Made by a program: the position numbers and the translations under genes. A stretch of DNA of 64,000 nucleotides from IMG/VR virus record IMGVR_UViG_3300022868_000009, positions 280,635 to 344,634 of that record; one strand, 5' to 3'. Below the pieces are notes generated by a model that was not told the origin of the DNA, made no database searches, and was given only the letters and a program-made list of their open reading frames with translations. Below, in pieces: positions 11,525-60,355 of the stretch. Numbering within the stretch: the first letter of the stretch is position 1; every line of letters begins with the position of its first letter.

Positions 11525-12130
11525 ATGAGAAACCTTAAAACATATGAAGATTATTTATATGAATATTCTGAAATTAAAAAAGAAGAAACACTACACATAT
11601 ACACAGATGGTAGTTATTCTGACCAAGTTTCAAATTATAAAATAAGTTATAGTGCAGTTTTAATAACAGAAAACGAAAACGAATATTATCTTTCAGGACA
11701 TATGGTTAGAAAATATGTTGATCAATTATTTGGTTCTCAAACACCATTAAATAGTTTAACTGCTGAATTAGTGGCTTTAAATCAACTACTTTATATTATG
11801 AATAGCTATAAAATATCTAATAAAAATCTTCTAATTTATACAGATTGTGAATCTGTTTACGAACACTTCAATGAATCTTTGCCTGTAATAAAGAAAAAAA
11901 ATATGTCTAAATTAGTCAATAATATAAAACATAATATTAACAATTTAAAAAATAAAAAAAATATCGTTGATATTAGATGGATTCCAGGACATAAACAAAT
12001 ATACGGTAATATGATAGCAAACTATCTAGCCAAAAAAGGTGAAGATATCAACACTTTTAAAATATATTTTAATATGGCAGATAGACATTTTAAAAATATG
12101 AAAGACTACGATTGGTTCAAAAAACTTTAA
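11525..12130 (+). CDS. Ribonuclease HI-like protein with N-terminal MRNLKTYE tag
   Basis: IYTDGS, TAELVA, IYTDCES, WIPGHKQIYGNMIANYLAK. Confidence 0.88.
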   Translation: MRNLKTYEDYLYEYSEIKKEETLHIYTDGSYSDQVSNYKISYSAVLITENENEYYLSGHMVRKYVDQLFGSQTPLNSLTAELVALNQLLYIMNSYKISNKNLLIYTDCESVYEHFNESLPVIKKKNMSKLVNNIKHNINNLKNKKNIVDIRWIPGHKQIYGNMIANYLAKKGEDINTFKIYFNMADRHFKNMKDYDWFKKL

Positions 12131-12765
12131 AAATCACCACCTTTTATTGGAGGAGCACCCCAGTGACAAACTAAATATTGTGGCATATTTTCAAGTTTCT
12201 TAAATTTCAAACCTTTACTAGCTAAAGTTAAAACAAATAACCAATCATGACCATAACCAGTTTTCCATTCTATACCAGAAATATTCTTATGACAAATAGA
12301 ACTTGTTCCGATCTGACCAAATCTCGGTTCAACCAACCTTTTATGTAATATTTTAAAATCTTTACTACCAACTAAATAATCATCATAATATACCCAGTCA
12401 TATTTATTAATATCAAATTGAGACATTATAGTTTCTAAATGTGTTTTACCCCAAGCATCATCACTATCAAGATAAGCGATAACTTCACCTTTAGCATGGT
12501 TTAATCCTTCTGTTCTAACATTTCCACTATAAGTTGGCTGTTTTGGTATTATTATACATTCAATATTTGGAATATCATCCCAATTTTCTTTATATATCTC
12601 ATAAGTTTTTGTACAACCATCTGAAACAATAATTAATTCAGTATTTTTATATGATTGTTTTATAAAAGTTTTAACAGCTCTTATAAATTTTTTATCTCTA
12701 TTTTTAGCAGCATTTGGATAATCACCCAAATAACTTGCCATTATAACTGAAACTAATTTATTCAT
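12127..12765 (-). CDS. Glycosyltransferase family 2
   Basis: VSVIMASY, ELIIVSDG, IAYLDSDD. Confidence 0.9.
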   Translation of the reverse strand: MNKLVSVIMASYLGDYPNAAKNRDKKFIRAVKTFIKQSYKNTELIIVSDGCTKTYEIYKENWDDIPNIECIIIPKQPTYSGNVRTEGLNHAKGEVIAYLDSDDAWGKTHLETIMSQFDINKYDWVYYDDYLVGSKDFKILHKRLVEPRFGQIGTSSICHKNISGIEWKTGYGHDWLFVLTLASKGLKFKKLENMPQYLVCHWGAPPIKGGDF

Positions 12766-12780
12766 ATTATTTATTTTATT

Positions 12781-13953
12781 TTAAACTGCAACCTCCATTT
12801 TTATATTAGGATGATATTCATAATTAACAAATTCAAAATCTTCATATCTATAATCATAAATAGAAACTTTTTTTTCTATTTTTAATTTACAGGGTTTAAA
12901 ACTATCCCTTGTTAACAATTCTGTTAATTGTTCCTCATGATTCTTATAAATATGAACATCTCCCCCCTGCCAAATAAATTCATCAGGTTTCATATTAACA
13001 ACAGATGCAATCATATTTAATAAAATAGAATAAGATGCAATGTTAAATGGTAAACCTAAACCAACATCCACAGATCTTTGATATAATTGCAAAGATAAAG
13101 ATTTAGTAGATACATTTAAATCATTTAATTTATGTATTTGTTCAACTCTATCATATTTATCCATAAAAGTAACAATTTGATATTTATCATTATCAAAATA
13201 GTATTCTAATCTTTCTTTATGTGACAATGTTTTAACATAACATTGAAATAATATATGACATGGTGGTAACATCATATCATCAACATCATTAACATTCCAT
13301 GCATTAACAATATGCCTTCTTGAATCTGGATTTGACATTAAACCATCAATTAAATTATCAATTTGATTTATACCTGGAAAATATACATCTTTCCAACCAA
13401 GATGATCTACTATCTTAGTTTCTGATTTAGTATAATTATATTCTTTCTTTACTTCAACTTTTTCATAATGTCCATTCCAATCAACCCATTGTTTACCATA
13501 AACTGGTCCAAGATCTCCCCATTTAAGAGCAAAATTATCATCTTTTTCAATTTTAGTTTCAAATTCTTTCTGATTCAACATTTTAAATTTCTTTACAGTC
13601 TTTTCATCTATTAAATCATTTTGCATATATTTTTCTAATTTCTTACTTCTGTAATCTTTATACGGCCAATCACTCCAAAAAGTGACACCATTATCAATTA
13701 AATATTTGATATTAGTATTACCAAATTTATCATATTTCTCGTCATAAGATTTTAAAAACCATAATAATTCATGAATTAATGATTTATTGTGTATTTTTCT
13801 TAATGTTAATAATGGAAATCCATCATCCATTTTAAATCTTATATTATAACCAAAAACACTTTTAGTACCAATATTAGTTCTGTCTGCTTTATCAGAACCA
13901 TTTTCAAATATATGTTTGATAAGTTCTTTATATTTCTTATCATGTATATTCAT
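12781..13953 (-). CDS. thyA: Thymidylate synthase with insertions
   Basis: DRTNIGT, ELLWFL, LGPVYGKQW, LPPCH, YQRSVDVGLGLPFNIASY, DVHIYKNH. Confidence 0.97.
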   Translation of the reverse strand: MNIHDKKYKELIKHIFENGSDKADRTNIGTKSVFGYNIRFKMDDGFPLLTLRKIHNKSLIHELLWFLKSYDEKYDKFGNTNIKYLIDNGVTFWSDWPYKDYRSKKLEKYMQNDLIDEKTVKKFKMLNQKEFETKIEKDDNFALKWGDLGPVYGKQWVDWNGHYEKVEVKKEYNYTKSETKIVDHLGWKDVYFPGINQIDNLIDGLMSNPDSRRHIVNAWNVNDVDDMMLPPCHILFQCYVKTLSHKERLEYYFDNDKYQIVTFMDKYDRVEQIHKLNDLNVSTKSLSLQLYQRSVDVGLGLPFNIASYSILLNMIASVVNMKPDEFIWQGGDVHIYKNHEEQLTELLTRDSFKPCKLKIEKKVSIYDYRYEDFEFVNYEYHPNIKMEVAV

Positions 13954-13976
13954 ATTATTCTTTATTTTTGGAAAGA

Positions 13977-14507
13977 TTAACGTTTCATTAATTCTCTATA
14001 TTGTTCTTCTAATTGAGATATTTTATCTTTCATATATTCATTCTCACTAGTTAATTTTTCAACCTCACATTTATATTCATTTAATTCAATTTGCAAATTC
14101 CCAGTCGTTGTACCTTCACAACACTTATCAAATATATCACCATCTTCTTCCATTAAAATAGTTGAAATATATTTTCCAGATATTTCATTTTTTATATCAT
14201 TTAATTTCGCATGTAATGCATTTTGATAATTAATATCAGAATCTAATTCTAATTCATCTTTAATCCATCCAGATGATACTTCTAAACAATGATTTTCATG
14301 TTCTGTTATTAATTGTCGAACTTGTGGTTTAATTGCATTTGATATCAATAAAGTAAAATTACTTTTATCTGCATATGATTTACATAATATCTCACTTATA
14401 GTGTCAGCAATAATATTTGATATTATTTCGTAAGCTTCTGTTGATACAACCATTTCGGTGTATGTTTGTTCTCTATTTTCATTAAATATGAAACCTTTTT
14501 TAATCAT
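13977..14507 (-). CDS. Hypothetical protein, C-terminal coiled coil
   Basis: 176-aa ORF in operon. Confidence 0.7.
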   Translation of the reverse strand: MIKKGFIFNENREQTYTEMVVSTEAYEIISNIIADTISEILCKSYADKSNFTLLISNAIKPQVRQLITEHENHCLEVSSGWIKDELELDSDINYQNALHAKLNDIKNEISGKYISTILMEEDGDIFDKCCEGTTTGNLQIELNEYKCEVEKLTSENEYMKDKISQLEEQYRELMKR

Positions 14508-14518
14508 TTTTTAAATTA

Positions 14519-18134: not shown

Positions 18135-19208
18135 CTAAGAAACTACATACTTATATAACTTCTTGTGATAGTCAAGATCCTTATAATCACTAACCATCAA
18201 ATAAACTATATAACAAAAATAAAATATTTTATCAATCATCAAACTTCTATCAACATCACCACCAACAAACCTAAATTCAACATAATCATCATCAATAATT
18301 CTTCTTAAATTCATACCGAAAGTTTTAGAACCTAGATTATTAGATAATTCCTTTAATTCGATTTCCAAAAACTTCTCAACATCATCTACAAAATTATCAC
18401 TACTAAACTCAGGAAACTCACCCTTCTTTATCTTATCTAAAAATGTCTGACAATATGCAGTAAATTGTCTATATTCAATATCTTTATAAATATAGGGTTT
18501 TTCACTAGTCTCAACCATCATAATTAAACCCTTTACAAAATTCCATCTATCTACATCTTTATTTAAACCAATATTAATATGAATAGAAGTGTGATTATTC
18601 ATATACCAATAATCCTGTTTATTAAAATCATCATAAAAATCATTAATCATTTCTAAACCTTTATCCAAACCAGTCACATATTTCTTAGGTGAAAATTCAA
18701 CCCCCCTAGATAAAGTTTGATCAAACTCAAATTTTAAATCATCATAATATTTAGTATAAAAATTAGGCAAATATTCACCAATTTTATTTATAACATATCC
18801 AAGATTTTCAAATTCATCTTCTTCCTCTTCCTCATATTCAATTTCTAAATTATCAATAATATTAATCATATTAGAAACTATATATTCCTCTGTCTTATTC
18901 TTACAACTATTCATAATATTATCCAAAGAATCAGATATATTTCCAAAATCAAACTGATTATAAACTATCTGTTTTAAAAAATCTAAATCATAATCAATTT
19001 TATCAATGTCTAATCCAACACGTAATTTTTTAAATATTTCTAATAAATACTTATCCTCTACTTTAGAAACTTTAACATTCTCATCATCTGTTTCTAATTC
19101 AAATTCAAAAGCTAATGTAAAATGTTCTACCATACCAGAATCAAATAATAATTTCTTATCTTTTCTATTAAATTCTAGTAATTGTTTATATGTTATAAGA
19201 TATTTCAT
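18135..19208 (-). CDS. Putative amidoligase (COOH-NH2 ligase-like) with N-terminal MKYLITY..LLE tag
   Basis: FEFELE, VEFSP, SIHINIG, YVEFR motifs. Confidence 0.6.
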   Translation of the reverse strand: MKYLITYKQLLEFNRKDKKLLFDSGMVEHFTLAFEFELETDDENVKVSKVEDKYLLEIFKKLRVGLDIDKIDYDLDFLKQIVYNQFDFGNISDSLDNIMNSCKNKTEEYIVSNMINIIDNLEIEYEEEEEDEFENLGYVINKIGEYLPNFYTKYYDDLKFEFDQTLSRGVEFSPKKYVTGLDKGLEMINDFYDDFNKQDYWYMNNHTSIHINIGLNKDVDRWNFVKGLIMMVETSEKPYIYKDIEYRQFTAYCQTFLDKIKKGEFPEFSSDNFVDDVEKFLEIELKELSNNLGSKTFGMNLRRIIDDDYVEFRFVGGDVDRSLMIDKIFYFCYIVYLMVSDYKDLDYHKKLYKYVVS

Positions 19209-19216: not shown

Positions 19217-19239
19217 TATATATTAAAAATTAATATATA
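19217..19239. promoter_or_regulatory. Back-to-back AATATATA putative late promoters
   Basis: TATATATT at 19217 and AATATATA at 19232 serve divergent genes. Confidence 0.55.
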
Positions 19240-19244: not shown

Positions 19245-19637
19245 ATGAAAAATTTTTTAAATTTTATAAATAATAATCACGAATATTCAAATAATGAAAT
19301 GAATAAAATTATTAAATTCATTGGCAAATTATGTAAATATGAAAACAAAAAAGCAAACGCAATATTCAATTTTAACATATCAAAAAATATACTTAATGAT
19401 ACAGATTTTAATGCATCAGTAAGATCAAATAACATATATTCAAACGATATAAAACAAGTTACAAAAATACTTGATAAAGTATGCGAAAAATTAAATATGT
19501 ATCCAACAATAAATATTATGATTAATACATTTGGTAGATCAACAAATTATAATATTAACTGTACATTTGAATTTACAGAAAAAAATAAATTAGACATTCT
19601 TGCAACTATAGAAGGAAATAAATTAGGACTATTATAA
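19245..19637 (+). CDS. Hypothetical, C-tag family (EGNKLGLL)
   Basis: C-terminal motif. Confidence 0.75.
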   Translation: MKNFLNFINNNHEYSNNEMNKIIKFIGKLCKYENKKANAIFNFNISKNILNDTDFNASVRSNNIYSNDIKQVTKILDKVCEKLNMYPTINIMINTFGRSTNYNINCTFEFTEKNKLDILATIEGNKLGLL

Positions 19638-19982
19638 ATGAAACATCTTAAAAAATATAACGAAGAGAAAATAGAAAATAAATGGAAAAATACAATAGTA
19701 ATTTATGAATCTTACTCGGATTCATGGGTATATGTAGATGGTTCATTGATATCAGAATGGTCTGTTACCATATTTGATATATTATTAATATTATCAGAGG
19801 ATAATGTTAATATATTGAAATATAAAATATCAATGTTAACAGATCATTTTCCTCAAAATATAATTGATCATTTAAACGATCACCCAGAACAAGAATTTCC
19901 AATGTATGATTTAGATATATATGAACAAGAAATAATAAAAAGAAAAGCAGAAAAAGAAGGACAAAAAATGGGTCTGTTTTAA
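19638..19982 (+). CDS. Hypothetical, N-tag (MKHLKKYNE) + C-tag (EGQKMGLF)
   Basis: Both terminal motifs. Confidence 0.8.
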   Translation: MKHLKKYNEEKIENKWKNTIVIYESYSDSWVYVDGSLISEWSVTIFDILLILSEDNVNILKYKISMLTDHFPQNIIDHLNDHPEQEFPMYDLDIYEQEIIKRKAEKEGQKMGLF

Positions 19983-19983: not shown

Positions 19984-20307
19984 ATGAAACATATTTCAAC
20001 ATATAACGAATACTTACAAACACCCTTAAATTTATCAATACCAATATAGAAGATAATGATAAATTTACAAATTACCTAGAACAATCAAACCTAATATCAA
20101 AAAATTCTTTATTTAGAACATATCATAAAGGATGTATATATCATACATTTTTAATATCAATTATAGATAATCATTCTTAAAAATTAGTTGTTCAAACCCA
20201 GATAATGTATCTGGGTTTGAACAAAAAGGAGTAAATGAAATATTATTTGATCCAGATATAATTATATAATTATAAGATTAGAAGCAAATAAAATGGGATT
20301 ATTATGA
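19984..20307 (+). pseudogene. Disrupted N-tag/C-tag gene
   Basis: Begins MKHISTYNE at 19984, ends EANKMGLL-TGA overlapping ATG 20304; internal stop/frameshift. Confidence 0.65.
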
Positions 20308-20585
20308 AATATTTAAAGACATACAACGAATCAAAATATAAACCATCATATACTGCACGCCCAATGCCAGATAAATATCGGCTTAGATGTGAATATTTAA
20401 TAGATAAATACGGTAAACTAAATACAAATAATAAAATTACACATTTATCAGAAGAATCAGAAATTTTACAAATAGATATAAATGATGATTATAGATTAGA
20501 TATTTTTAAAACTACTGATAAATCGTTACTTAATATGAGAGAATTAGAAATGAAATTACAAGCAAAAGAATTAGGATTGTTATAG
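20304..20585 (+). CDS. Hypothetical, N-tag (MKYLKTYNE) + C-tag (AKELGLL); paralog of 21030 and 58927 ORFs
   Basis: Shared RC.YL.DKYG motif. Confidence 0.8.
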   Translation: MKYLKTYNESKYKPSYTARPMPDKYRLRCEYLIDKYGKLNTNNKITHLSEESEILQIDINDDYRLDIFKTTDKSLLNMRELEMKLQAKELGLL

Positions 20586-21029: not shown

Positions 21030-21416
21030 TTATAACAATCCCATTTTTTTCGCAGTTAATATTTTTTCTATTTCAGAACCTAATAAAAATGCATTTAATT
21101 TTATGAGTATAGAATTATCTAAATCATCATATTGTACATTTCTTTCATATTCACTATCTGATAAATTATAATAATAAATAATACCGGTTGTATTAATATT
21201 ACTTTGATAAATGTCAAATTTTAAATCATCTAATTTTATTTTTATTAAATTAGTAGATGTAGATCTACCATAAAGATCAGATATTCTATTATTACCATCA
21301 TTATTTTTTTCACCGTATTTATCTAGTAAATATAAACACCTATTAAATACTTTATCAGGCATTAAATAACAATGATTTCTATTAATTTTTTCTAAATATG
21401 ATTTCAAATATCTCAT
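21030..21416 (-). CDS. Hypothetical, N-tag (MRYLKSYLE) + C-tag (AKKMGLL)
   Basis: Both terminal motifs. Confidence 0.8.
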   Translation of the reverse strand: MRYLKSYLEKINRNHCYLMPDKVFNRCLYLLDKYGEKNNDGNNRISDLYGRSTSTNLIKIKLDDLKFDIYQSNINTTGIIYYYNLSDSEYERNVQYDDLDNSILIKLNAFLLGSEIEKILTAKKMGLL

Positions 21417-21457: not shown

Positions 21458-21760
21458 ATGAAATACCTTAAAACATATAATGAAAATAAATCATTTAATG
21501 ATAAAGTTAATATGATTAAAAAAATAGTAGACACCGTTGGTAAAACTGATGATAGAGGTAAAATTTTAAATTTAAACTATAAATCAAAAGGTTCTAAAAC
21601 CTATCTTTTAAAAATTCAAGATACATGCTGGATAAGTATTGAGATGATAGGTACAAGATTTTTAAGAAATTTAGATTCTAGAGTAATTGAATCTATATAT
21701 AAAGAATTAAAAGAAAAATACCCAGAGTTTTTTATGGGAGATAAATTAGGTATTTTATAA
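21458..21760 (+). CDS. Hypothetical, N-tag (MKYLKTYNE) + C-tag (GDKLGIL)
   Basis: Both terminal motifs. Confidence 0.8.
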   Translation: MKYLKTYNENKSFNDKVNMIKKIVDTVGKTDDRGKILNLNYKSKGSKTYLLKIQDTCWISIEMIGTRFLRNLDSRVIESIYKELKEKYPEFFMGDKLGIL

Positions 21761-25416: not shown

Positions 25417-25468
25417 AGTTTAGAAGGTATTCCGTGTCTTTGTATTATAATTAAAGGAGGAAACAAAA

Positions 25469-52483: not shown

Positions 52484-52807
52484 ATGAATTATAGAAAATT
52501 TGTGCAAGAACGAATTGGTATTTTTATAGTCTTTACACAAGAAGATTATAATGAAGTTGTTAAAATCTTTGAATCTATTGGATTAACATTTAATCCATTT
52601 TCTAACTTATCATTTAATAGAGTATTTTGTATTACTTTACAAATAAATCCATGGGGTGGTAACAGAGTTTTCAGGGATTCTTATTCATATAGATCATATT
52701 ATGAAAGAGAAAAAGAATATTCCAAATTTTGGGATGTAGATAAATTAAGAGAAGAGAGTAAAGATTTACCAATAAAATATGAAGCAAGAAAGATGGGTTT
52801 ATTATAA
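52484..52807 (+). CDS. Hypothetical, C-tag (EARKMGLL)
   Basis: Tail-to-tail TTATAA overlap with 52802 gene. Confidence 0.8.
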   Translation: MNYRKFVQERIGIFIVFTQEDYNEVVKIFESIGLTFNPFSNLSFNRVFCITLQINPWGGNRVFRDSYSYRSYYEREKEYSKFWDVDKLREESKDLPIKYEARKMGLL

Positions 52808-53146
52808 TAGACCCATTTTGTTTCCTGTGTGATATATTTTGAATTCTTTATTATAATCAGCATATTCTTCTAGGCTTTCAAATACTGTAAAAAATGTATT
52901 AGAAGAATAATTAAATGCGATGAGGGTTTTATTATAACCAATATAATATTCATTGTAACTATAATTGTTAATGCAATGTTCTAATATTTCTTTGTGATGG
53001 GCTTCATCTTCATTGGGTTCATCCCAGTATTTATTCAATTGACTTCTCCAATAATTAATAAGGCTTGTTACTTCTTCCGGAGTTTTGCAGTTAACTAGGA
53101 CTTTATCTGATTGTATATTTTCTAAATATGTACTAAGGTATTTCAT
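52802..53146 (-). CDS. Hypothetical, N-tag (MKYLSTYLE) + C-tag (GNKMGLL)
   Basis: Both motifs; AATATATA upstream. Confidence 0.8.
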   Translation of the reverse strand: MKYLSTYLENIQSDKVLVNCKTPEEVTSLINYWRSQLNKYWDEPNEDEAHHKEILEHCINNYSYNEYYIGYNKTLIAFNYSSNTFFTVFESLEEYADYNKEFKIYHTGNKMGLL

Positions 53147-53200
53147 ATGAAGATATATATTGAATTTGTTTTTTCAAAATAAATTTTGTATTTTATATTT

Positions 53201-53482
53201 ATGAAATTTTATTATTTAGAAGTAAAAGAAAAGGATTGGAATGAAGTTATAAACTATATAACTAAAGTTATTCCTATTTGGAATGAAAAGTTTGATATAA
53301 GTCTTCCTATTAAACATATTGGATTTTATATAGATCTAAAGAATGAATTTGGTTTAAATAATGATAATTTATTATTGTTTCGTTATCATAAATTAAATTT
53401 TAAAACTTGTGATTATATAAAGTGTAAGGATATAGAAGAATTCTTATTTTCTTATGAATCAAGTAAGATGGGATTATTGTAA
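53201..53482 (+). CDS. Hypothetical, C-tag (ESSKMGLL)
   Basis: ORF track, start corrected. Confidence 0.8.
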   Translation: MKFYYLEVKEKDWNEVINYITKVIPIWNEKFDISLPIKHIGFYIDLKNEFGLNNDNLLLFRYHKLNFKTCDYIKCKDIEEFLFSYESSKMGLL

Positions 53483-53503
53483 CATTATTAAATAAAACAA
53501 AGA

Positions 53504-53827
53504 ATGAACATAGCTATCGAGTTATATACTAAGAAAGAGTTATTTAAGGCATGGAAAAAGATGTTAGATTTAGGATATAATTTAGATGTTTGGCATAGAA
53601 TTTACATGGAGAAGGATTATAATTGGATTGGATTTGATTATATAAAAAAAAGGGGTGGTCTTTATATTTATTTTGATTTAGATGAATATATAATGACTGG
53701 TTGGGATGGTTTATATAATATACACATGATTAAATATATTCCTGATGATATGGATTTTATTATCAATCATATTGATATTGATTCGATTGATTCGTGTATA
53801 GAGGGTATTAAATTAGGTTTATTATAG
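53504..53827 (+). CDS. Hypothetical, C-tag (EGIKLGLL)
   Basis: Paralog of 54920/41187. Confidence 0.8.
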   Translation: MNIAIELYTKKELFKAWKKMLDLGYNLDVWHRIYMEKDYNWIGFDYIKKRGGLYIYFDLDEYIMTGWDGLYNIHMIKYIPDDMDFIINHIDIDSIDSCIEGIKLGLL

Positions 53828-53876
53828 ATTTGAAATTATGAGATTTTATAGGATCTACTAAAATGGGATTAATGTA

Positions 53877-54176
53877 ATGAATGAACTTGTATATATTAGT
53901 GTAAATAATAAGGAACAATATGATAGAGTTATACGTATTGCTGAAAATAATGGTTTTAAAACAAGAGGTAATTCCTCTTCTTTACCTGTTAATATTTATC
54001 TTTGTATTAAGGATGCTGTTGAAGGATCTTGGTTAAAGGATGTTATTTATTTTAGTAGTAATGATTATGATCTATATAAAACTGTATTACCAGTTAGGAT
54101 AAAATGTGATTATGAGGATTTTTCAGAAGAATATTTAAAGTTTATAACAGAATCAGATAAGATGGGATTATTATAA
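53877..54176 (+). CDS. Hypothetical, C-tag (ESDKMGLL)
   Basis: ORF track. Confidence 0.8.
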   Translation: MNELVYISVNNKEQYDRVIRIAENNGFKTRGNSSSLPVNIYLCIKDAVEGSWLKDVIYFSSNDYDLYKTVLPVRIKCDYEDFSEEYLKFITESDKMGLL

Positions 54177-54178
54177 TT

Positions 54179-54590
54179 ATGAATGAATCGAATACAATAT
54201 TGTGTGCTGCTTTTTGTGGTACTGGAAAAACTTATATTTGCAATCAGAATAAGAAGGCTATTAAAATTGAATATTGGAAGTATGAAAGAAGGACTAGAAA
54301 AAGAATATGTTAGTGATATAAAAAAGCAAATTGGAAAAGTAGATTATATTTTTTTAAGTACTGACATAGAAGGTTTGAAACTATTAAAAGGTTTTAATAT
54401 TGTACTTGATTACCCTGAAAATAATTTGAGAAATGAATACCTTGATAGGTTTATTGATAGAGATAGTCCTTACGATTTTATAGGGACGTTTATGAAACAT
54501 TGGAATATATGGATAGATGAACTTAAAGATCAAAATTATTGTAAACATATTATATTGAAAAATGGTGAGTACTTGCAAAATATTCTCTAA
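54179..54590 (+). pseudogene. Frameshifted P-loop kinase-like gene
   Basis: Frame from ATG 54179 reads MNESNTILCAAFCGTGKTYIC; the remainder is in the 54183 frame after ~54285. Confidence 0.7.
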
Positions 54591-54620
54591 ATTAAAGACT
54601 ATGTTTTAAATTAAATAACA

Positions 54621-54923
54621 ATGAATGATATAGATATAAATGTAAATGAAGATAATTATATAGAATTTGTCAATTATTTATATAGTATTAATTATATAAC
54701 TAAGAATGATAATGAAAGGTTAGTTAATTGGTATACTGATGTGAATGATTATTTTCAAAAAGAATATAACTCATATGAATATAGATTATTTTTTGATCGT
54801 AAAGAATGGGATATAATAGCTTGTTGTTGTGGCGGTTCTGAATTTTTTAAAAAAGTAACTTTTATTAATAATTTAAAGGAATTAGAGGTTTATATGAATT
54901 GTTTAAAAATGGGGCTATTATGA
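54621..54923 (+). CDS. Hypothetical, C-tag (NCLKMGLL)
   Basis: ORF track. Confidence 0.8.
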   Translation: MNDIDINVNEDNYIEFVNYLYSINYITKNDNERLVNWYTDVNDYFQKEYNSYEYRLFFDRKEWDIIACCCGGSEFFKKVTFINNLKELEVYMNCLKMGLL

Positions 54924-55240
54924 AAAGAATTGCAATAGAGATATATTCCATAGAGAAATTATTTGAAATATGGGAAGAAATGGTTGATTTAGGTTACACT
55001 TTAAGTTCTTGGACTAATATATTTAAGAGAACAGAAATTGATTGGCTTGGTTTTTTAAGTATTGAAAGAGGTGGTATTTATCTTTGTTTTGATTTAGATA
55101 AGTGTATAATGATTGGTTGGGGAAGTCTATATTATGATTCTGGAAAAAAGTTTATTATTAAAGATTTTGAATTAATTATAGATAGTAGTAAAGATGATAT
55201 TAGATTTCATCTAAATTCAATTAAGATGGGGTTATTATAA
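54920..55240 (+). CDS. Hypothetical, C-tag (NSIKMGLL)
   Basis: ATGA overlap at 5' end, TTATAA overlap at 3' end. Confidence 0.8.
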   Translation: MKRIAIEIYSIEKLFEIWEEMVDLGYTLSSWTNIFKRTEIDWLGFLSIERGGIYLCFDLDKCIMIGWGSLYYDSGKKFIIKDFELIIDSSKDDIRFHLNSIKMGLL

Positions 55241-55603
55241 TAGTCCGAGTTTATTTCCTTGTATCAATATATCAAGATCCATTCCATATTCTTTTTTTAA
55301 CCAATCATCACAACTTATAAAAGAATCTTTATAAAATGACACATATTCTAATAGAAACTTCATTGAGCTCCAACACTTATCAAAGCGTTGACCATCATCT
55401 AATGTAAAAAATGTTTTATCTTTTGAAAAAGCAACCCAAAAATTTTCTTTAAAATTTACTCTAGAATATTCTATATCATATTTTTCCTCAATTAATTTTA
55501 TTATAAATTTTGTTTCTTTATGAGGTATATCAGTTATTACAACAATATTATCCTCTTTATTTTCATTGTATGTATTAAGATATTTCATTTTCAAATGTTT
55601 CAA
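55235..55603 (-). CDS. Hypothetical, doubled N-tag (KHLK-MKYLNTYNE) + C-tag (QGNKLGLL)
   Basis: Both motifs; core related to 61463/61750 (ITDIP). Confidence 0.8.
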   Translation of the reverse strand: MKHLKMKYLNTYNENKEDNIVVITDIPHKETKFIIKLIEEKYDIEYSRVNFKENFWVAFSKDKTFFTLDDGQRFDKCWSSMKFLLEYVSFYKDSFISCDDWLKKEYGMDLDILIQGNKLGLL

Positions 55604-55611
55604 ATCTTATT

Positions 55612-56163
55612 TTGTTTTATATATTAATTTGTTTTTTTAGAATATTTTTTTTATCTTTCAATATGAAAATAAATATAATGTATGCGGGGATGGCGGATGA
55701 TATTATGCTTCCAATGTTACAAGTTCCAACTTTCATAATAATCCAAGTTTATTTGCTTCTATTTTTATTTGATGGAGCCTTTGCTAGAAATGGTTGGGAA
55801 AGTCAAAAAGAAGATATAAGACAAACGTTATTGTCTGGTAATAATGAGAATTCATGGCACAGGGAGGTATATTTAAAATATGAATCAGACACTCCAACTT
55901 TTTCATTAGAAGAAAAATGTGTTATATTATCTGATATAGATAAAGATGAATGTTGGAAATTGACATTTGATTATAATGGAAAGCGCAGAGAACTAATTTA
56001 TTATCATCATCAAAACTTTTATGATGTGTGGCCTGATAATATAAAGGATATTAATCATTTATTTAGTATTGGTGCTACTTTTGAATATTTAACAGAACCT
56101 AAATTAAAAGAAATGTTGAAGACAAGATGTACTGGTTATTTATATGATCAAGTGACACCATAA
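55612..56163 (+). CDS. Hypothetical protein, start uncertain
   Basis: ORF track. Confidence 0.5.
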   Translation: MFYILICFFRIFFLSFNMKINIMYAGMADDIMLPMLQVPTFIIIQVYLLLFLFDGAFARNGWESQKEDIRQTLLSGNNENSWHREVYLKYESDTPTFSLEEKCVILSDIDKDECWKLTFDYNGKRRELIYYHHQNFYDVWPDNIKDINHLFSIGATFEYLTEPKLKEMLKTRCTGYLYDQVTP

Positions 56164-56217
56164 GAAACAGAAATAATTCAAATGAATAGAAGGATTTATA
56201 TTAATAAAATAGATATA

Positions 56218-56697
56218 TTAATATAATCCCATTTTATTTGCATTATAAAGGTCTGGATTTTCTTTCCAAAACCATTCCCAATATTCTTCTAAATTATTAT
56301 AAGGTAATTGGTTATTATAACAATTTAAATATTCTAATCTTTTAGATAATTCAGGTAATTCAGTTAATTGGTTACCATCACAATCTAAATATTTTAACTC
56401 TTTTGGTAATTCAGGCAATTTAGTTAATTTATTATTATAACAATATAATATTTCTAACCCTTTTGGTAGTTCAGGTAATTCAATTAATTTGTTGTTGTCA
56501 CAATATAACATTTCTAATCCTTTTGGTAATTCAGGTAATTCAGTTAATTGATTATTATAACACATTAATTTTTCTAACCCTTTAGGTAATTCAGGTAATT
56601 CAGTTAAATTTAAATTAACTAAATTTAATATTTTACCATCATCACTTAGATGATCTTTTATTAATTGGTTTTCTGAATATGTTTTTAAATATTTCAT
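56218..56697 (-). CDS. Leucine-rich-repeat protein (20-aa LPELPKGLE.L.C.NN.L repeats) with N-tag and C-tag
   Basis: About 5 LPX-type repeats; MKYLKTYSE...ANKMGLY. Confidence 0.9.
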   Translation of the reverse strand: MKYLKTYSENQLIKDHLSDDGKILNLVNLNLTELPELPKGLEKLMCYNNQLTELPELPKGLEMLYCDNNKLIELPELPKGLEILYCYNNKLTKLPELPKELKYLDCDGNQLTELPELSKRLEYLNCYNNQLPYNNLEEYWEWFWKENPDLYNANKMGLY

Positions 56698-56718
56698 CTA
56701 TTTTATAATTTTATTGAC

Positions 56719-57102
56719 TTACATAAGTCCTAATTTACCTGATTCAAATACATATGGGTTATTATGAAAGAATATTTTCATAATAAATAATATTAGTTCA
56801 TAATCTTTTATTATTTGGTGTCCATCATTTTTATTTGAAGATTCTTTTATCCAATTTGGATCTGATACAACTGCAACTTGCTGTTCAACTTTTTGTAATA
56901 TTATTTGAAATAGATTTCCTTCTCGTTTTAACACAATAGTTGTGTATACTCCGTTATAATCTATTTCAAGGAATCCATTTCTAATATAAATTTTAAATTT
57001 GGTATCTTTAAACATATCTTTTATTGTATCAACAAAGAAATCTTGATTGTTATCATTAACTGAAATCTCATTTATCATTTGATATGTCTTTAAATGTTTC
57101 AT
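56719..57102 (-). CDS. Hypothetical, N-tag (MKHLKTYQMINE) + C-tag (ESGKLGLM)
   Basis: Both motifs. Confidence 0.8.
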   Translation of the reverse strand: MKHLKTYQMINEISVNDNNQDFFVDTIKDMFKDTKFKIYIRNGFLEIDYNGVYTTIVLKREGNLFQIILQKVEQQVAVVSDPNWIKESSNKNDGHQIIKDYELILFIMKIFFHNNPYVFESGKLGLM

Positions 57103-57123
57103 CTATTTTATAATTTTATTGAC

Positions 57124-57492
57124 TTACAAGACACCAAGATTTTTTGTCCCATTATACATATTTATCATATTTTGTAATTCATTCATAAATTCATCTTTAG
57201 TTATTAATATATCTGAGTGTTTATAATAACCGCAAGGACCATAAATACGATTTAATTTATAATGAATTGTTCTACTTTCATGTTGTACACAGCAACTATA
57301 CACCATTTTTCTTTTATCTTCCTCTTTTTCAAGTATATCACAACATAATTCTATTTTTGTTCTATGTACATCAAATTTAAAATCATTTATAAGTTTATCA
57401 TATATTTCAATTGCTTCTTTTGCGTTATTAAATTCAACTGATATAAACTTATCTTCATCTATATTTTCATTATATGTTTTAAGGTATTTCAT
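57124..57492 (-). CDS. Hypothetical, N-tag (MKYLKTYNE) + C-tag (TKNLGVL)
   Basis: Both motifs. Confidence 0.8.
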   Translation of the reverse strand: MKYLKTYNENIDEDKFISVEFNNAKEAIEIYDKLINDFKFDVHRTKIELCCDILEKEEDKRKMVYSCCVQHESRTIHYKLNRIYGPCGYYKHSDILITKDEFMNELQNMINMYNGTKNLGVL

Positions 57493-57962
57493 TATAATAA
57501 TCCTAGTTTATTTGCTTCTAAATCTGCTTTAAGGTCTTCACTTTTAAGGTATTCTAATATTTGTGAAAGTTTTTTATAATTTTTTAAATTTTTACTAACC
57601 CTTGTTAAAAGACTAAATTTATCTCTATTATTATCTTCAATAAGATAAGCAATAACATCAACAATTTTACTAGTATTAATATCAACTGAATCTAATACTT
57701 CTAGATGTGTATAATTACCTAATTTAATATTTTCTGGTATTTTTATAAATACTTGTTCATATTTATCACCATGTAAAATATATTGATATTTATTATATAT
57801 TTTAGCACATTCCTTTTTAATATCTGATATTAGTTTATTAAAATTATCAAAAATTGTTTTATCATTTATTTGTTTATAAAGCAATTCTTTTTGTTTATAA
57901 AATGATTCTTGTTGTTTATAGTTTTCTTCTATGTTTTCGTTATATGTTTCACTTATGATCAT
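57492..57962 (-). CDS. Hypothetical, degenerate N-tag (ETYNE) + C-tag (EANKLGLL)
   Basis: ORF track. Confidence 0.75.
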   Translation of the reverse strand: MIISETYNENIEENYKQQESFYKQKELLYKQINDKTIFDNFNKLISDIKKECAKIYNKYQYILHGDKYEQVFIKIPENIKLGNYTHLEVLDSVDINTSKIVDVIAYLIEDNNRDKFSLLTRVSKNLKNYKKLSQILEYLKSEDLKADLEANKLGLL

Positions 57963-58082
57963 ATTGTTTTGTTTGTTTTATATATTAATTTGTTTTTTTA
58001 GAATTTTTTTCTTATATTACAATAATTATTAAAAATTATGAAAGAATTAATTTGGTTAAATATATGTTATAAAGGTCTTATG

Positions 58083-58325
58083 TCAAAAGAAATGTATTTC
58101 TACATATTCATCTATGATGATTGGATGATATCTTTTAATATCTCTCACTATATCATCTACAATTTCTTTTAGTTTTATTATATCTGTATTTGGTGGAACA
58201 AATAAGTAAATTTCTGAATCATCTTTACACAAACCCTTTTTATTCAAATAATATGGTGTATTTTTAAATATATCATCAATAATATATTTAAATTTAAATG
58301 ATTCATACTTTTTTATATATTTCAT
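58083..58325 (-). CDS. Hypothetical, N-tag only (MKYIKKYES)
   Basis: ORF track. Confidence 0.7.
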   Translation of the reverse strand: MKYIKKYESFKFKYIIDDIFKNTPYYLNKKGLCKDDSEIYLFVPPNTDIIKLKEIVDDIVRDIKRYHPIIIDEYVEIHFF

Positions 58326-58335
58326 AATTATTAGA

Positions 58336-58746
58336 TTATAAAAGACCCATTTGACCTGTTATTAATAATCTTTTTACTTTTTTTAATGGTACTAAATAAT
58401 TTTCCCAGTTTTCTGGACTATCATCTATACCATCTGTTATATCTTTATCTTCCCAAACAGATATTGGTATTTTATTATCCTTTGTAAAGATAGTGTTTGC
58501 ACCATTTTGATCAAATCGTATAATCTCTTCATCAAATAAATTAAAAATTGTTCGACTTGTTTTTATATTATCATCAATATATGAATTATAGTCAGTAATT
58601 AAATGTTTTGCATATTGATTAAACCATTTACAACCATTCTTTATAGCTAAATTAGTATAAGTAAAATATTCATCAATATTACTTACTTCAAACACAAATA
58701 ATACATTTGGTATTGTACTTTCATTATATGTTTTTAAATATTTCAT
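58336..58746 (-). CDS. Hypothetical, N-tag + C-tag (TGQMGLL)
   Basis: Both motifs. Confidence 0.8.
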   Translation of the reverse strand: MKYLKTYNESTIPNVLFVFEVSNIDEYFTYTNLAIKNGCKWFNQYAKHLITDYNSYIDDNIKTSRTIFNLFDEEIIRFDQNGANTIFTKDNKIPISVWEDKDITDGIDDSPENWENYLVPLKKVKRLLITGQMGLL

Positions 58747-58926
58747 TATAGTTTATATATTTATTTTTTTATTTAAGAAAATTTTAACTATTTTTTTAAT
58801 ACCTTTAGTTTTAACTATTGGTATATTTTTAAAATAATTATTTAATTCATCAACCATTTTAATTCTTAACTTAGATGTAATGGTCATAGACTTAGCAAAT
58901 TGATTATATGTGTCTAATTTATTCAT

Positions 58927-59352
58927 TTATAATAGTCCTAATTTAGTAGATTCAAATTTTGATTCTATATTTTCACTATGAATATATTCTATTATTTTTT
59001 CTTCAAATTCCGTAGAGCAACTCTCAATATAATAATTAGTGTCATTCACAGATTGAAGAAATATTCTATAAGAAGTCGAAATTTCTTCATCATACTTTAT
59101 GATATATAATGATAAATCATCATCTGGATCTACAATTGTTCTTCTATCTATATTAGTAGGTTTATCTATAAAATCTGAACCAGATACATTTACTTTAACA
59201 TCTGTTCTACTATTCAAATATTCATTAGGTTTACCATATTTATTTATTAAATACTCACATCTATATAATAATTCTTCATCATCTTTATAAATATGATGAA
59301 CAGTACCATTATCATATATTAATGATTCATTATAAGTTTTTAAATATTTCAC
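58927..59352 (-). CDS. Hypothetical, N-tag + C-tag (ESTKLGLL)
   Basis: Both motifs; RCEYLI.KYG family. Confidence 0.8.
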   Translation of the reverse strand: MKYLKTYNESLIYDNGTVHHIYKDDEELLYRCEYLINKYGKPNEYLNSRTDVKVNVSGSDFIDKPTNIDRRTIVDPDDDLSLYIIKYDEEISTSYRIFLQSVNDTNYYIESCSTEFEEKIIEYIHSENIESKFESTKLGLL

Positions 59353-59471
59353 AAGACTATATATTAATTTTTTATTTTAAGATAAATTTTCTATATTAAA
59401 ATTATGGATATTAAAGAAAACCTTAAAAATTATTATGAAATTAGATAAATATTTCTTAATTAAAGATAAAT

Positions 59472-59795
59472 ATGATTAAAATTAATATTACGGGAATTAA
59501 TTGTAATGAATTTGAAAAGTTACAAAAAATATTCTTTGATCAAAATATACCTTGGTATTATAGTGGTTATAAATTACAATCATCCGATGATTGTAATTAT
59601 TATCATAACATTTATATTGTTTCAAAAATCGTTGTCATGAGAAATGATAACCATGAAAAAGAAGAATATTATATGACCTTTAAAAAAGATAATATAATCT
59701 CAAAAGACCAAGATTTAATTGAATATAAATATGATGAAATGGATGAGAATACATTAAAAAGTTATTTTAACGGTTTACAACTAGGATTATTATGA
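59472..59795 (+). CDS. Hypothetical, C-tag (NGLQLGLL)
   Basis: ORF track. Confidence 0.8.
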   Translation: MIKINITGINCNEFEKLQKIFFDQNIPWYYSGYKLQSSDDCNYYHNIYIVSKIVVMRNDNHEKEEYYMTFKKDNIISKDQDLIEYKYDEMDENTLKSYFNGLQLGLL

Positions 59796-60110
59796 TATCA
59801 ATAAATATAGAAAATATAAGTCTAAATGACTTCAAGAAATTGCAAATACATATGATTGATCAAAATATTCCTTGGATTGATGGTGATTGGGAAGTTTGGG
59901 TAGATGGATATTGGTCATTTATAATTAATCATAAAAAAAAATATCTTACTAATTGATCAATATACATCAACTGGTAAACCAGTTGATGGTTACCTTAGAT
60001 ATAATATGCAATTGTGTAATGTTTCATCTCCAATCGTTTTAAGTGTTGAAGAAATGCTTGATTTAAATATATACGAATATTTGGAGGCGAAAAAGTTTAA
60101 TTTATTATAA
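59792..60110 (+). pseudogene. Frameshifted paralog of 59472 (ends EAKKFNLL)
   Basis: DQNIPW motif; frame breaks near A-run at 59933-59941. Confidence 0.65.
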
Positions 60111-60355
60111 TAGATCCATCTTATTCGATGCAATATACTCTTGTAAATTAAAATCTTTAGTTATATCAGAACCATTTAACTTACCTAACAAAATACCAAT
60201 TTCAGTATATTTTTCAATAATTTGATTATAAAACCAAGTAGTCCAATGATTTCCAATATAAGTTTTATCATCTATATTAATTAGTAAATTAATTTCTTTC
60301 CAAAACCATTCCTTATATCACTAATACTTTCATCATATGTCTTTAAGTATTTCAT
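60105..60355 (-). pseudogene. Disrupted N-tag/C-tag gene (MKYLKTYDE ... ASNKMDLL)
   Basis: Both termini readable, frame broken. Confidence 0.65.

What the first reader, a model, noticed from the sequence alone, without database searches (positions are those of the whole stretch)
11525..60355. N-terminal M-K-[YH]-L-K-T-Y-x-E motif resembling the T4 capsid-targeting sequence, coupled to its own promoter
Seen: about 15 intact ORFs (11525, 18135-, 19638, 20304, 21030-, 21458, 52802-, 55235-, 56218-, 56719-, 57124-, 57492-, 58083-, 58336-, 58927-) plus remnants (19984, 60355-) begin with this motif. Their transcription units are headed by AATATATA, the octamer that also precedes the baseplate operon, and not by the TAnnTTTG promoter. 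Known: T4 internal proteins carry a ~10-aa N-terminal capsid-targeting sequence (MKTYQEFIAE in IPII/IPIII) removed after Glu by the prohead protease, and IPI* inhibits the GmrSD nuclease. Inference: these are late-made, head-packaged, injected proteins, probably counter-defence factors.
Basis: partly seen in the sequence, partly recalled or inferred. Interest (0 to 1): 0.85.

Follow-up and report, generated by a model that had tools for sequence, protein, structure and literature searches.

The report
Capsid-targeting-like leader on jumbo-phage proteins
A roughly 345-kb jumbo phage with Bacteroidota-type promoters puts the same 9-12-residue N-terminal leader on dozens of unrelated proteins, probably to load them into the capsid for injection as phage T4 does, though no virion data exist.

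Summary
All 15 intact ORFs and both remnants begin with M-K-[YH]-[LI]-K-[TK]-Y-x-E or a close variant: 16 matches against 0.4 in shuffles. All 11 of their transcription units start with AATATATA, the box that also heads the baseplate operon. None has the early CCGTATxTTTGTAT promoter.

- **Portable tag.** Its codons vary synonymously. It sits on an RNase H, an LRR protein and a primase-like protein. In relatives it sits on ankyrin proteins, topoisomerase IB and a lysozyme. AlphaFold leaves it outside the fold.
- **Head genes.** I found this phage's head module elsewhere on its contig: T4-like portal, T4-like capsid protein, and a gp21-family prohead protease fused to a scaffold. The scaffold carries eleven Y-S-E-Y-I-A-E repeats, close to the T4 targeting sequence MKTYQEFIAE. 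Leader-bearing genes flank this module.
- **Reading.** Most likely a cleavable capsid-targeting leader (about 0.58).
- **Cautions.** The reported variant matches the scaffold repeat poorly. Carriers are acidic and include replication-type enzymes. The promoter class also serves replication genes. There is no proteomics.
47 window ORFs, early ones included, end in K-[ML]-G-L-L. This tail is unexplained.

The parts
11525..12130 (+). RNase H with leader MRNLKTYEDYLYE; no C-terminal tail
   Evidence: Pfam RNase_H 1.9e-12 covers residues 22-172, so the first ~21 residues are an extension. AATATATA at 11511-11518, 6 nt before the ATG.
18135..19208 (-). 357-aa protein of unknown, enzyme-like family with leader MKYLITYKQLLE; no C-terminal tail
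   Evidence: 158 homologous clusters found. The N-terminal Phi-x-x-Phi-[LI]-x-E-F-N-x-K-D stretch is conserved across 25 aligned homologues. The octamer lies 8 nt upstream.
19245..19637 (+). First gene of a late-box unit (MKNFLNFINN, degenerate leader) ending in GNKLGLL
   Evidence: AATATATA at 19232-19239; C-terminal tail.
19638..19982 (+). Leader gene MKHLKKYNE with tail QKMGLF
   Evidence: Operon-internal, abutting the preceding stop codon.
19984..20310 (+). Pseudogene remnant: leader MKHISTYNE and tail ANKMGLL in one frame, with the middle frameshifted several times
   Evidence: Three-frame translation.
20304..20585 (+). Leader gene MKYLKTYNES with tail AKELGLL
21030..21416 (-). Leader gene MRYLKSYLE with tail AKKMGLL and its own late box
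21458..21760 (+). Leader gene MKYLKTYNEN with tail GDKLGIL and its own late box
52802..53146 (-). Leader gene MKYLSTYLE with tail GNKMGLL, inverted within an array of plus-strand genes; full-length BLAST grouped it with untagged genes at 25084-26166, a link lost once leader and tail were stripped
55235..55588 (-). Leader gene MKYLNTYNEN with tail GNKLGLL; body homologous to the untagged genes 61463-61753 and 61750-62046
   Evidence: Alignment A2 shows the leader plus linker as a 14-residue N-terminal add-on. In the AlphaFold model residues 1-12 are coil with pLDDT below 50.
56218..56697 (-). LRR protein with leader MKYLKTYSEN and tail ANKMGLY
   Evidence: Pfam LRR_4 8e-17. AlphaFold mean pLDDT 94, with only residues 1-10 low (mean 58).
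56719..57102 (-). Leader gene MKHLKTYQMINE with tail GKLGLM
57124..57492 (-). Leader gene MKYLKTYNEN with tail KNLGVL
57492..57962 (-). Degenerate leader MIISETYNEN with tail ANKLGLL; heads a four-gene late-box operon; body homologous to the untagged genes 24695-25087 and 51002-51382
58083..58325 (-). Leader gene MKYIKKYES; no C-terminal tail
58336..58746 (-). Leader gene MKYLKTYNES with tail GQMGLL and its own late box
58927..59352 (-). GTG-initiated leader gene (M)KYLKTYNES with tail TKLGLL and its own late box
60105..60355 (-). Frameshifted leader gene: MKYLKTYDES for 24 codons, then a second frame running to ...YIASNKMDLL; late box at 60386
   Evidence: End coordinate computed from that translation (approximate).
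10151..10158 (-). AATATATA box 23 nt before the baseplate operon (869-aa, 218-aa and gp6-like 650-aa genes)
   Evidence: phrog_219 baseplate wedge 1.2e-8 for 4910-6862.
53154..60386 (-). Span holding six minus-strand AATATATA boxes that head leader units; upstream ends at 60386, 59365, 58761, 57986, 55625 and 53161
   Evidence: Three of them share the extended upstream sequence aaaaaacaaatt.

Best explanation
The motif is a short, portable N-terminal leader that most likely works like the T4 capsid-targeting sequence.

Shown:
- A 9-12-residue leader, M-K-[YH]-[LI]-K-[TK]-Y-[NSE]-E, is conserved at the amino-acid level.
- It is attached to unrelated protein bodies.
- It is predicted to lie outside the folded domain.
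- It is confined to transcription units driven by the phage-specific AATATATA box.
- The phage, about 345 kb with Bacteroidota-type early promoters, has a T4-type head module: portal, capsid protein, and a gp21-family protease fused to a scaffold with eleven 14-residue Y-S-E-Y-I-A-E repeats.

Inferred:
- During prohead assembly the amphipathic leader (hydrophobic residues at positions 3/4 and 7) co-assembles with the scaffold core.
- The protease then removes it after the Glu at position 8-12, at a Y-x-E or [LI]-x-E site.
- The mature proteins stay in the head and enter the next cell with the DNA.

Several protein families have both untagged members, at least two of them in early-promoter units, and leader-tagged members in late-box units. 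The leader plus the late box therefore looks like a module that turns a cytoplasmic effector into a pre-packaged one. What the cargo does is not established. Counter-defence or host takeover is a guess.
For: 1. Protein-level constraint. Synonymous codons vary at least as much as the genome background: Lys-5 is AAG in 7/16 against 14%, Tyr is TAC in 4/14 against 8%, and Leu uses TTA, CTT and CTA.

2. Portability.
- Pfam and PHROG over 59 distinct carriers give RNase H, LRR (8), ankyrin (8), topoisomerase IB, lysozyme, NFACT-R and a primase-like Toprim protein.
- Paralogues exist with and without the leader.
- An RNase H in a relative lacks it.

3. Structure. Residues 1-12 have pLDDT below 50 and are coil in one model. 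In a pLDDT-94 LRR model the first ten residues are the only low-confidence stretch.

4. Cleavage-site-like ending. Among genes selected on residues 1-6 only, 31/33 have an aromatic residue at position 7, and 28/33 have Phi-x-E within residues 5-14 against 55/208 other genes (p = 2e-10). When Glu-9 is absent, INE or LLE follows. The T4 protease cuts after L/I-x-E, and targeting depends on residues 4 and 7 (PMC9026906).

5. Head machinery of this same phage (L368, contig 3300022868_000009).
- Portal matches T4 gp20 at 1.8e-28 and the capsid protein matches gp23 at 4e-9.
- Residues 4-174 of an 811-aa protein align to T4 gp21 (4e-6), keeping NKPVLIIE, NRNERIY, GEFDHP and VSSRAAG.
- Close homologues carry Pfam PF03420.
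- tblastn finds annotated head maturation proteases.

6. Scaffold repeats. There are eleven Y-[SAT]-E-Y-[ILV]-A-E repeats, conserved across the clade. The T4 sequence MKTYQEFIAE scores 9.5 bits on this repeat profile.

7. T4-like N-termini in this clade.
- MITLFSDYINEN (10.1 bits) lies in the head locus.
- MKSYSEFINES aligns to T4 IPIII at 7/12 identities from residue 1 and hits the PHROG 'internal head protein' family at 6.7e-4.
- The pattern occurs in 11/611 proteins at the N-terminus, against 0.04% at internal positions.

8. Position. Leader genes lie directly after the capsid-protein operon and near the portal in this phage, and next to the portal in LR756502.

9. Promoter. The leader shares its promoter class with the baseplate, portal, protease and capsid-protein genes.
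Against: - There is no virion proteomics, N-terminomics or transcript data for this or any related phage. The phage is uncultured.
- The reported variant itself scores -4.9 bits on the scaffold-repeat profile. As a group, leader N-termini are only slightly closer to the repeat than other N-termini (median -11.9 against -15.2).
- The P3 residue is Tyr, not the Leu or Ile of T4.
- Carriers include replication-type enzymes (RNase H, Toprim/primase-like) that are not known head cargo.
- Carriers are acidic (median pI 5.5), unlike the highly basic T4 internal proteins (PMC8442874; pI).
- The AATATATA box also heads topoisomerase II and an exonuclease, so it marks a non-early class rather than a strictly late one.
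- 38 carriers in 127 kb would be an unusually diverse cargo.
- 30 of 38 carriers share their C-terminal module with early proteins, so the bodies are not head-specific.
Confidence: 0.58

Rival explanations
1. The leader is a docking peptide for another partner or site, not the head. Candidates are a replisome hub such as a sliding clamp, a tail or baseplate assembly factor, or an intracellular compartment.
For: - RNase H, a primase-like Toprim protein and topoisomerase IB carry it.
- L4 and Y7 sit where a PIP-type clamp motif has its hydrophobic residues (comparison from my own knowledge, not tested).
- The promoter class also serves replication genes.
Against: - LRR, ankyrin, lysozyme and dozens of small acidic proteins carry it as well.
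- Most replication proteins sampled lack it: topoisomerase II, the exonuclease and thymidylate synthase.
- It lacks the Gln and the double aromatic of a PIP box.
- The resemblance to the T4 sequence and to the scaffold repeats, and the position beside head genes, point to the head.
Confidence: 0.15
2. The leader reflects an expression requirement. The AATATATA box lies only 4-8 nt from the ATG, so the first genes would be translated from leaderless or nearly leaderless mRNAs, and a particular A/U-rich 5' coding sequence or nascent peptide would be favoured.
For: - The octamer-to-ATG spacing is 5-8 nt for most first genes here, and 4-8 nt in L116 and LR756502.
- Thr-6 is always ACA (13/13 against 51% background).
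Against: - Synonymous variation at the other positions equals or exceeds background.
- The leader is just as conserved in operon-internal genes that follow a stop codon.
- Genes with the same promoter and spacing lack it: HAD at 11400-, 62071+, and the capsid protein.
- Conservation extends to a Glu at position 8-12, which is not explained by initiation.
Confidence: 0.1
3. The promoter plus leader is mainly a recombination handle. A conserved cassette boundary (...KMGLL-stop-MKYLKTYNE...) would let gene cassettes be shuffled and duplicated, as proposed for the T-even internal-protein loci, without the peptide itself doing anything.
For: - Tandem arrays have the conserved junction.
- Three late boxes share extended upstream sequence.
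- The units are inverted insertions within arrays of oppositely oriented genes.
- There is a T-even precedent (PMC2839356).
Against: - Synonymous divergence within the motif shows selection on the peptide.
- The leader is conserved across distant phages whose DNA is no longer alignable.
- This reading is compatible with the best explanation rather than a replacement for it.
Confidence: 0.07

Closest known systems
[quoted passage not shown]
   Same: - About 10 N-terminal residues starting M-K.
- Hydrophobic or aromatic residues at positions 4 and 7.
- A Glu-terminated Phi-x-E ending.
- Attached to otherwise unrelated proteins.
- Carriers are small, diversifying genes, several with their own promoter.
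- The phage has gp20, gp21 and gp23 homologues.
- Relatives, and this phage, also have near-identical N-termini of the form MK[ST]Y..FI.E.
   Different: - The reported variant has an extra three residues (MKYL-KTYNE), Tyr at P3, and no F-I-A-E.
- There are dozens of carriers instead of three. They are mostly acidic and include LRR, ankyrin, RNase H, Toprim, topoisomerase IB and lysozyme proteins.
- Most also carry a C-terminal K[ML]GLL module.
- The protease is fused to the scaffold.
- No experimental evidence exists.
Propeptides of ejection and inner-body proteins in phiKZ-like giant phages (phiKZ, 201phi2-1, SPN3US)
   Same: - A giant phage with a gp21-related protease that cuts after Glu.
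- Many head-internal proteins.
- Paralogues with conserved N-termini, such as SPN3US gp53 and gp54 (PMC5694885).
   Different: - Most of those propeptides exceed 100 residues, and the cleavage motif is S/A-x-E.
- Here the leader is about 10 residues, as in T4, and is shared by unrelated folds.
Hypervariable internal-protein gene cassettes of the T-even phages (more than 30 variants flanked by promoter and stem-loop elements)
   Same: - Variable bodies behind a constant promoter plus leader.
- Evidence of duplication and inversion of whole units.
   Different: - No stem-loop element was identified here.
- The promoter is a phage-specific A/T octamer placed 4-8 nt from the ATG.

Membership tests
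T4-type capsid-targeting sequence system | Short (about 10-20 residue) N-terminal peptide shared by otherwise unrelated proteins | tested here: met
   Heterologous Pfam and PHROG domains follow the same leader. Bodies fall into many unrelated clusters.
T4-type capsid-targeting sequence system | Hydrophobic or aromatic targeting residues at about positions 4 and 7, and a protease site (L/I-x-E) at the end | tested here: inconclusive
   L4 and Y7 are nearly invariant, and Phi-x-E occurs within residues 5-14 in 28/33. However P3 is usually Tyr, and the motif scores -4.9 bits on the scaffold-repeat profile where the T4 sequence scores 9.5.
T4-type capsid-targeting sequence system | The phage encodes a gp21-family (Pfam PF03420) prohead protease and a T4-type portal and capsid protein | tested here: met
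   In L368, on the window's own contig: gp20 1.8e-28, gp23 4e-9, and gp21 4e-6 with the His and Ser motifs. PF03420 is recorded on close homologues.
T4-type capsid-targeting sequence system | A scaffold core carrying the same kind of cleavage sites | tested here: met
   Eleven Y-S-E-Y-I-A-E repeats lie in the protease-scaffold fusion, alongside [LI]-A-E sites in T4 gp22.
T4-type capsid-targeting sequence system | Expression together with head genes | tested here: inconclusive
   The promoter box is the same as for the portal, protease, capsid-protein and baseplate genes, but it also heads topoisomerase II and an exonuclease. No transcript data exist.
T4-type capsid-targeting sequence system | Proteins present in the virion with the leader removed, and injected | not testable with these tools
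   The phage is uncultured. The nearest isolates with annotation, such as Tenacibaculum phage PTm1, showed neither the late box nor the leader in the 50 kb inspected.
Bacterial beta-clamp-binding motif (QL[SDG]LF), considered for the C-terminal K[ML]GLL tail | Conserved Gln at position 1 and a flexible peptide that plugs the clamp pocket | tested here: not met
   Position -5 is Lys in 71/96 and Gln in 5/96. The tail is the end of a confidently modelled two-helix module rather than a free peptide. Binding itself was not tested.
Single paralogous family (motif as part of a conserved domain) | Homology extending through the protein bodies | tested here: not met
   With the leader and tail removed, 96 proteins fall into 61 BLAST clusters, and known unrelated folds carry the leader.

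The most novel reading that the evidence does not exclude
Two linked ideas.

1. Dual deployment. The phage runs a two-address system on one large effector repertoire. More than a third of the genes in a roughly 75-kb arm end in a two-helix module terminating in K[ML]GLL. Adding the N-terminal leader and the AATATATA box to a member converts it from an early-made cytoplasmic protein into a pre-packaged one that is injected. The phage would then ship a copy of part of its early arsenal inside the capsid.

2. Scaffold mimicry. Capsid-targeting leaders originate as single copies of the scaffold's own repeat. The T4 sequence MKTYQEFIAE fits this clade's Y-S-E-Y-I-A-E scaffold repeat. This would explain how such leaders work and how they arise.
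Probability: 0.3. Interest if true: 0.85.

Novelty: new variant of a known kind. Interest (0 to 1): 0.72.

Why it matters
How huge phages choose what to load into their very large capsids, and what they inject with the DNA, is largely unknown outside T4 and the phiKZ group. If this leader is a targeting signal, three things follow.
- It gives a sequence rule that predicts the injected proteome of a whole clade of uncultured Bacteroidota jumbo and huge phages. That clade includes the 630-735-kb genomes, and the predicted cargo includes LRR and ankyrin proteins and DNA enzymes.
- It links the T4 targeting sequence to scaffold repeats, which suggests a mechanism: mimicry of the scaffold.
- It offers a compact tag for loading foreign proteins into large capsids.

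The C-terminal K[ML]GLL module on about 36% of sampled genes is a second, unexplained addressing or interaction signal.

Tried and rejected
**Searches that found nothing useful**
- Literature search for the motif strings.
- Pfam and PHROG on about 40 small carriers and tail-only proteins: no families.
- Foldseek of the 55235 model against the PDB: no hit with E below 0.3.
- tblastn of a leader peptide and of the RNase H against annotated phages: nothing informative.
- PDB sequence searches for the primase-like protein, the 357-aa family and the LR756502 protease: nothing.
- Tenacibaculum phage PTm1, a distant isolate: Bacteroidota-type early promoters but no late box or leader in the 50 kb inspected, so no proteomic proxy.

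**Routes to the head genes**
- Walking left of the window found tail-like ORFs and then replication genes, not head genes.
- The head locus was finally reached through the LR756501 protease.

**Distribution**
- A scan of 185,579 bacterial and archaeal genomes found only two matches. One lies on a 51,205-bp MAG scaffold, the same length as the viral contig behind L010. So the motif is essentially absent from cellular genomes.

**Ideas rejected for the C-terminal tail**
- A ribosome-binding site for the next gene: 38 of 87 tails have no downstream gene. However the Gly codon GGA is enriched, most strongly in coupled genes.
- A prohead-protease site at the Glu at -8: only 45/96 have Glu there.
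- A clamp-binding motif: see the membership test.
- A SAP, HeH or UBA half-motif: the registers do not match by eye; not tested formally.

Full report
**What the window is**

The window has 24.9% G+C. It is 100% identical to two IMG/VR contigs of 348,222 and 344,634 bp.

Its gp6-like baseplate protein finds, by tblastn:
- the 462-735-kb uncultured huge phages LR756500-LR756504 and LR745206;
- the Prevotella Lak phages;
- jumbo phages of Flavobacterium, Tenacibaculum and Chryseobacterium.

About 22 plus-strand units at 26-45 kb start with a strongly conserved CCGTAT[AC]TTTGTAT element, usually followed by a GGAGG ribosome-binding site. This matches the Bacteroidota TAnnTTTG -7 promoter box as I know it. 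A related contig encodes type-IX-secretion C-terminal sorting domains. So this is a roughly 345-kb jumbo myovirus, most probably of a Bacteroidota host.

**Checking the observation**

- A loose pattern occurs 16 times in six frames, against 0.42 on average in shuffled sequence.
- The motif Met of the ORF listed as 55235- is at 55588.
- The ORF at 58927-59352 starts with GTG.
- 19984 is a multiply frameshifted pseudogene.
- 60355 is a singly frameshifted gene whose second frame ends in a degenerate tail.

In about 127 kb of non-redundant sequence from this phage, a position matrix built from the strict copies gives a bimodal score distribution, with 38 of 241 genes positive.

**Promoter coupling**

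All 11 motif-bearing transcription units in the window have AATATATA, usually within TTAATATATAA, 5-29 nt before the first start codon. For the 60355 remnant the distance is measured to the motif Met. The other motif genes follow directly in the same operons.
- The same box lies 23 nt before the baseplate operon.
- It also precedes a HAD-family gene, an exonuclease-like gene and, to the left of the window, topoisomerase II and large tail-like ORFs.
- No motif unit has the early promoter.
- Across the 127-kb sample the association is significant (16/38 against 17/203, p = 1.3e-6).

The box therefore marks a phage-specific, non-early class. 'Late' is only partly justified. The box ends 4-8 nt from most start codons. 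If it is a -10-like element, as the T4 late promoter is, many of these mRNAs would be leaderless. That is an inference.

**A peptide tag, not a nucleic-acid signal and not a domain**

- Synonymous codons vary at least as much as the background.
- The leader precedes an RNase H whose Pfam domain starts at residue 22, an LRR protein, and a primase-like Toprim protein.
- In related AT-rich viral contigs it precedes ankyrin-repeat proteins, a topoisomerase IB, a T4-type lysozyme and an NFACT-R protein.
- Stripped of leader and tail, 96 proteins fall into 61 BLAST clusters.
- Three of those clusters mix leader-tagged and untagged members. For two of them the untagged members sit in early-type units. 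In alignment A2 the leader plus linker is a clean 14-residue N-terminal addition.
- In AlphaFold models the leader is the only low-confidence part: pLDDT below 50 and coil in one model, and mean 58 against 89 or more elsewhere in an LRR model with overall pLDDT 94.
- The DNA pattern is virtually absent from 185,579 cellular genomes. The two matches were on MAG scaffolds, one the same length as a viral contig already fetched. It recurs on viral and metagenomic contigs from lakes, sludge, landfill leachate and the ocean.
- In the 642-kb phage LR756502, 14 of about 60 genes in a 41-kb stretch start M-[KR]-[YH]-[LI]-[KR]-x-[FY]-[ENS], mostly each with its own AATATATA box.

**Link to the T4 targeting sequence**

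From the T4 record itself, IPII and IPIII start MKTYQEFIAE-A and IPI starts MKTFKEFTS...ITE-A. The literature gives three relevant facts (PMC9026906; PMC8442874):
- cleavage occurs after L/I-x-E;
- targeting depends on residues 4 and 7;
- processing depends on residues 8 and 10.

In the leader here, L4 and Y7 are the most invariant residues after Met. A Glu follows at position 8-9. When it is missing, INE or LLE follows within three residues.

These phages also have a second leader type that is almost the T4 sequence:
- examples are MKSYSEFINES, MKTYKKFINEG, MKSYIKFINES, MKNYNNFINES and MITLFSDYINEN;
- it occurs in 11 of 611 proteins, against 0.04% at internal positions;
- BLASTP aligns one of them to IPIII from residue 1 with 7/12 identities, and it weakly hits the PHROG 'internal head protein' family;
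- both leader types occur in the same operons.

**The head module of this phage**

I located it through relatives. In LR756502, T4 gp20, gp21 and gp23 detect a portal, a 699-aa protein and a capsid protein in T4 order, with two leader genes next to the portal.

The protease domain is 79-94% identical among the best 80 of 365 related IMG/VR contigs and among the 120 best protein-database hits. Pfam PF03420 is recorded on some of these. tblastn also finds annotated head maturation proteases of T4-like and other jumbo phages.

Using the LR756501 copy as query, I retrieved the first 17.9 kb of the window's own 344,634-bp contig as L368. It holds:
- the portal (gp20, 1.8e-28);
- an 811-aa protease-scaffold protein. 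Residues 4-174 align to gp21 at 4e-6, with NKPVLIIE matching the gp21 N-terminal LIE site, plus NRNERIY, GEFDHP and VSSRAAG;
- the capsid protein (gp23, 4e-9).

All three are preceded by AATATATA. Two leader-plus-tail genes follow directly after the capsid-protein operon. Two more leader genes and one T4-like type-A leader gene lie by the portal.

**Scaffold repeats**

The scaffold part of the 811-aa protein has eleven tandem 14-residue repeats, N-I-x-Y-[SAT]-E-Y-[ILV]-A-E-x-[LV]-D-x. They are conserved in every relative inspected.

The core Y-S-E-Y-I-A-E is strikingly close to T-Y-Q-E-F-I-A-E of T4. On a profile of these repeats:
- the T4 sequence scores 9.5 bits;
- MITLFSDYINEN scores 10.1 bits;
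- MKSYSEFINES scores 7.2 bits;
- the reported MKYLKTYNE type scores only -4.9 bits. It shares no more than x-Y-[NS]-E with the first half of the repeat.

T4 gp22 likewise has several [LI]-A-E sites and starts MLKEQLIAEA. This supports a Glu-directed protease with Phi-x-E sites. It also suggests that type-A leaders mimic a scaffold repeat. For the reported type the link is indirect: same operons, same promoters, same position, same Glu-terminated architecture.

**Mechanism and confidence**

I put about 0.58 on a cleavable capsid-targeting leader. The evidence against it and the rival explanations, with their weights, are set out in those fields. In brief, the main cautions are the lack of any virion data, the replication-type and acidic carriers, the broad promoter class, and the poor fit of the reported variant to the scaffold repeat. 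The cassette-boundary reading can coexist with the main one.

Forty-seven ORFs in the window end in [KQNE][LM]G[LIV][LFMY]-stop, against 0.3 expected.
- In the 127-kb sample, 87 of 241 genes have the tail, including 30 of the 38 leader genes and many early-promoter genes.
- The logo over 96 distinct proteins is [DE]-[LI]-x-x-Phi-Phi-[EN]-[AGS]-x-K-[ML]-G-L-[LIY].
- AlphaFold models it as two confident helices with the last four residues as coil.
- In IMG/VR it is confined to this phage and its closest relatives. It is absent from the LR756502 stretch inspected.
- It is not merely a ribosome-binding site for the next gene, since 38 tails are terminal. However the Gly codon is GGA in 78% of coupled genes and 53% of terminal ones, against 27% background.

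Its function is unknown. It could be a shared interaction, oligomerisation or turnover handle on a rapidly diversifying set of small acidic proteins.

**Novelty and verdict**

Capsid-targeting leaders and variable internal-protein cassettes are known from T4. What is new here:
- a distinct leader variant, coupled to a promoter, across a clade of uncultured Bacteroidota jumbo and huge phages;
- dozens of carriers, including LRR, ankyrin and DNA-enzyme cargo;
- a protease-scaffold fusion whose repeats resemble the T4 targeting sequence;
- a second, C-terminal signature.

I rate it a new variant of a known kind, with interest 0.72.

Noticed in passing
window 19245-62046 (47 ORF ends, e.g. 23183, 25087, 49024, 53827, 55240, 62046): Forty-seven ORFs end in K[ML]GLL-stop, against 0.3 expected by chance. 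In a 127-kb sample 87 of 241 genes have the tail, early-promoter genes included. It is the end of a confidently modelled two-helix module. In IMG/VR it is restricted to this phage and its nearest relatives. Function unknown.
   Followed up: partly
window 26182-44930 and 60534, plus strand: About 22 copies of a strongly conserved early promoter, T-rich/GAA ... CCGTAT[AC]TTTGTAT, of the Bacteroidota TAnnTTTG type. It is often followed by a GGAGG ribosome-binding site, or by no ORF; a tRNA or small RNA may follow instead.
   Followed up: partly
L368:10892-11353 (window's own contig, outside the window): The prohead protease is fused to a scaffold with eleven tandem 14-residue repeats, N-I-x-Y-S-E-Y-I-A-E-x-L-D-x. 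They are conserved across the six clade members inspected, and the protease domain is found on about 360 related IMG/VR contigs. The T4 capsid-targeting sequence scores 9.5 bits on the repeat profile.
   Followed up: partly
window 33091-41891: Nine tRNA genes (Lys, Glu, Tyr, Pro, Phe, Arg, Gln, Met, Leu) among the early units.
   Followed up: no
window 18135-19208 and alignment A5: The 357-aa leader protein belongs to an unannotated family of 158 clusters. It has invariant residues of an enzyme-like kind: E35, E37, H210, N212, R247, E311 and R313. The family also occurs as a domain in 800-1100-aa proteins that carry peptidoglycan-binding, YkuD or SH3 domains. From memory it resembles GS-like amidoligases; this was not confirmed.
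   Followed up: partly
window 19224/19232, 21430/21444, 11407-11414: Late boxes occur back to back on opposite strands. The near-palindromic AATATATA serves divergent gene pairs: 19208-/19245+, 21416-/21458+ and 11400-/11525+.
   Followed up: no
L021:10113-10589 (right of the window); window 45207-45395: An ORF with a tail-like sequence (...LANQLGLF) in its middle looks like a fusion of two adjacent tail genes after loss of a stop codon. A truncated copy of its start lies in the window.
   Followed up: no
window 28696-29010, 42643-42951; L007:4259-4537: Several paralogous genes start MANKKDLTNA and look like HU/IHF-type DNA-binding proteins, judged from the N-terminal sequence only. Two have the TAnnTTTG box within 70 nt upstream.
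   Followed up: no
window-wide, C-terminal tail codons: The tail's Gly codon is GGA far more often than background. It is highest where the next gene overlaps the stop (ATGA or TAATG), suggesting the tail doubles as a Shine-Dalgarno-like element for translational coupling.
   Followed up: yes
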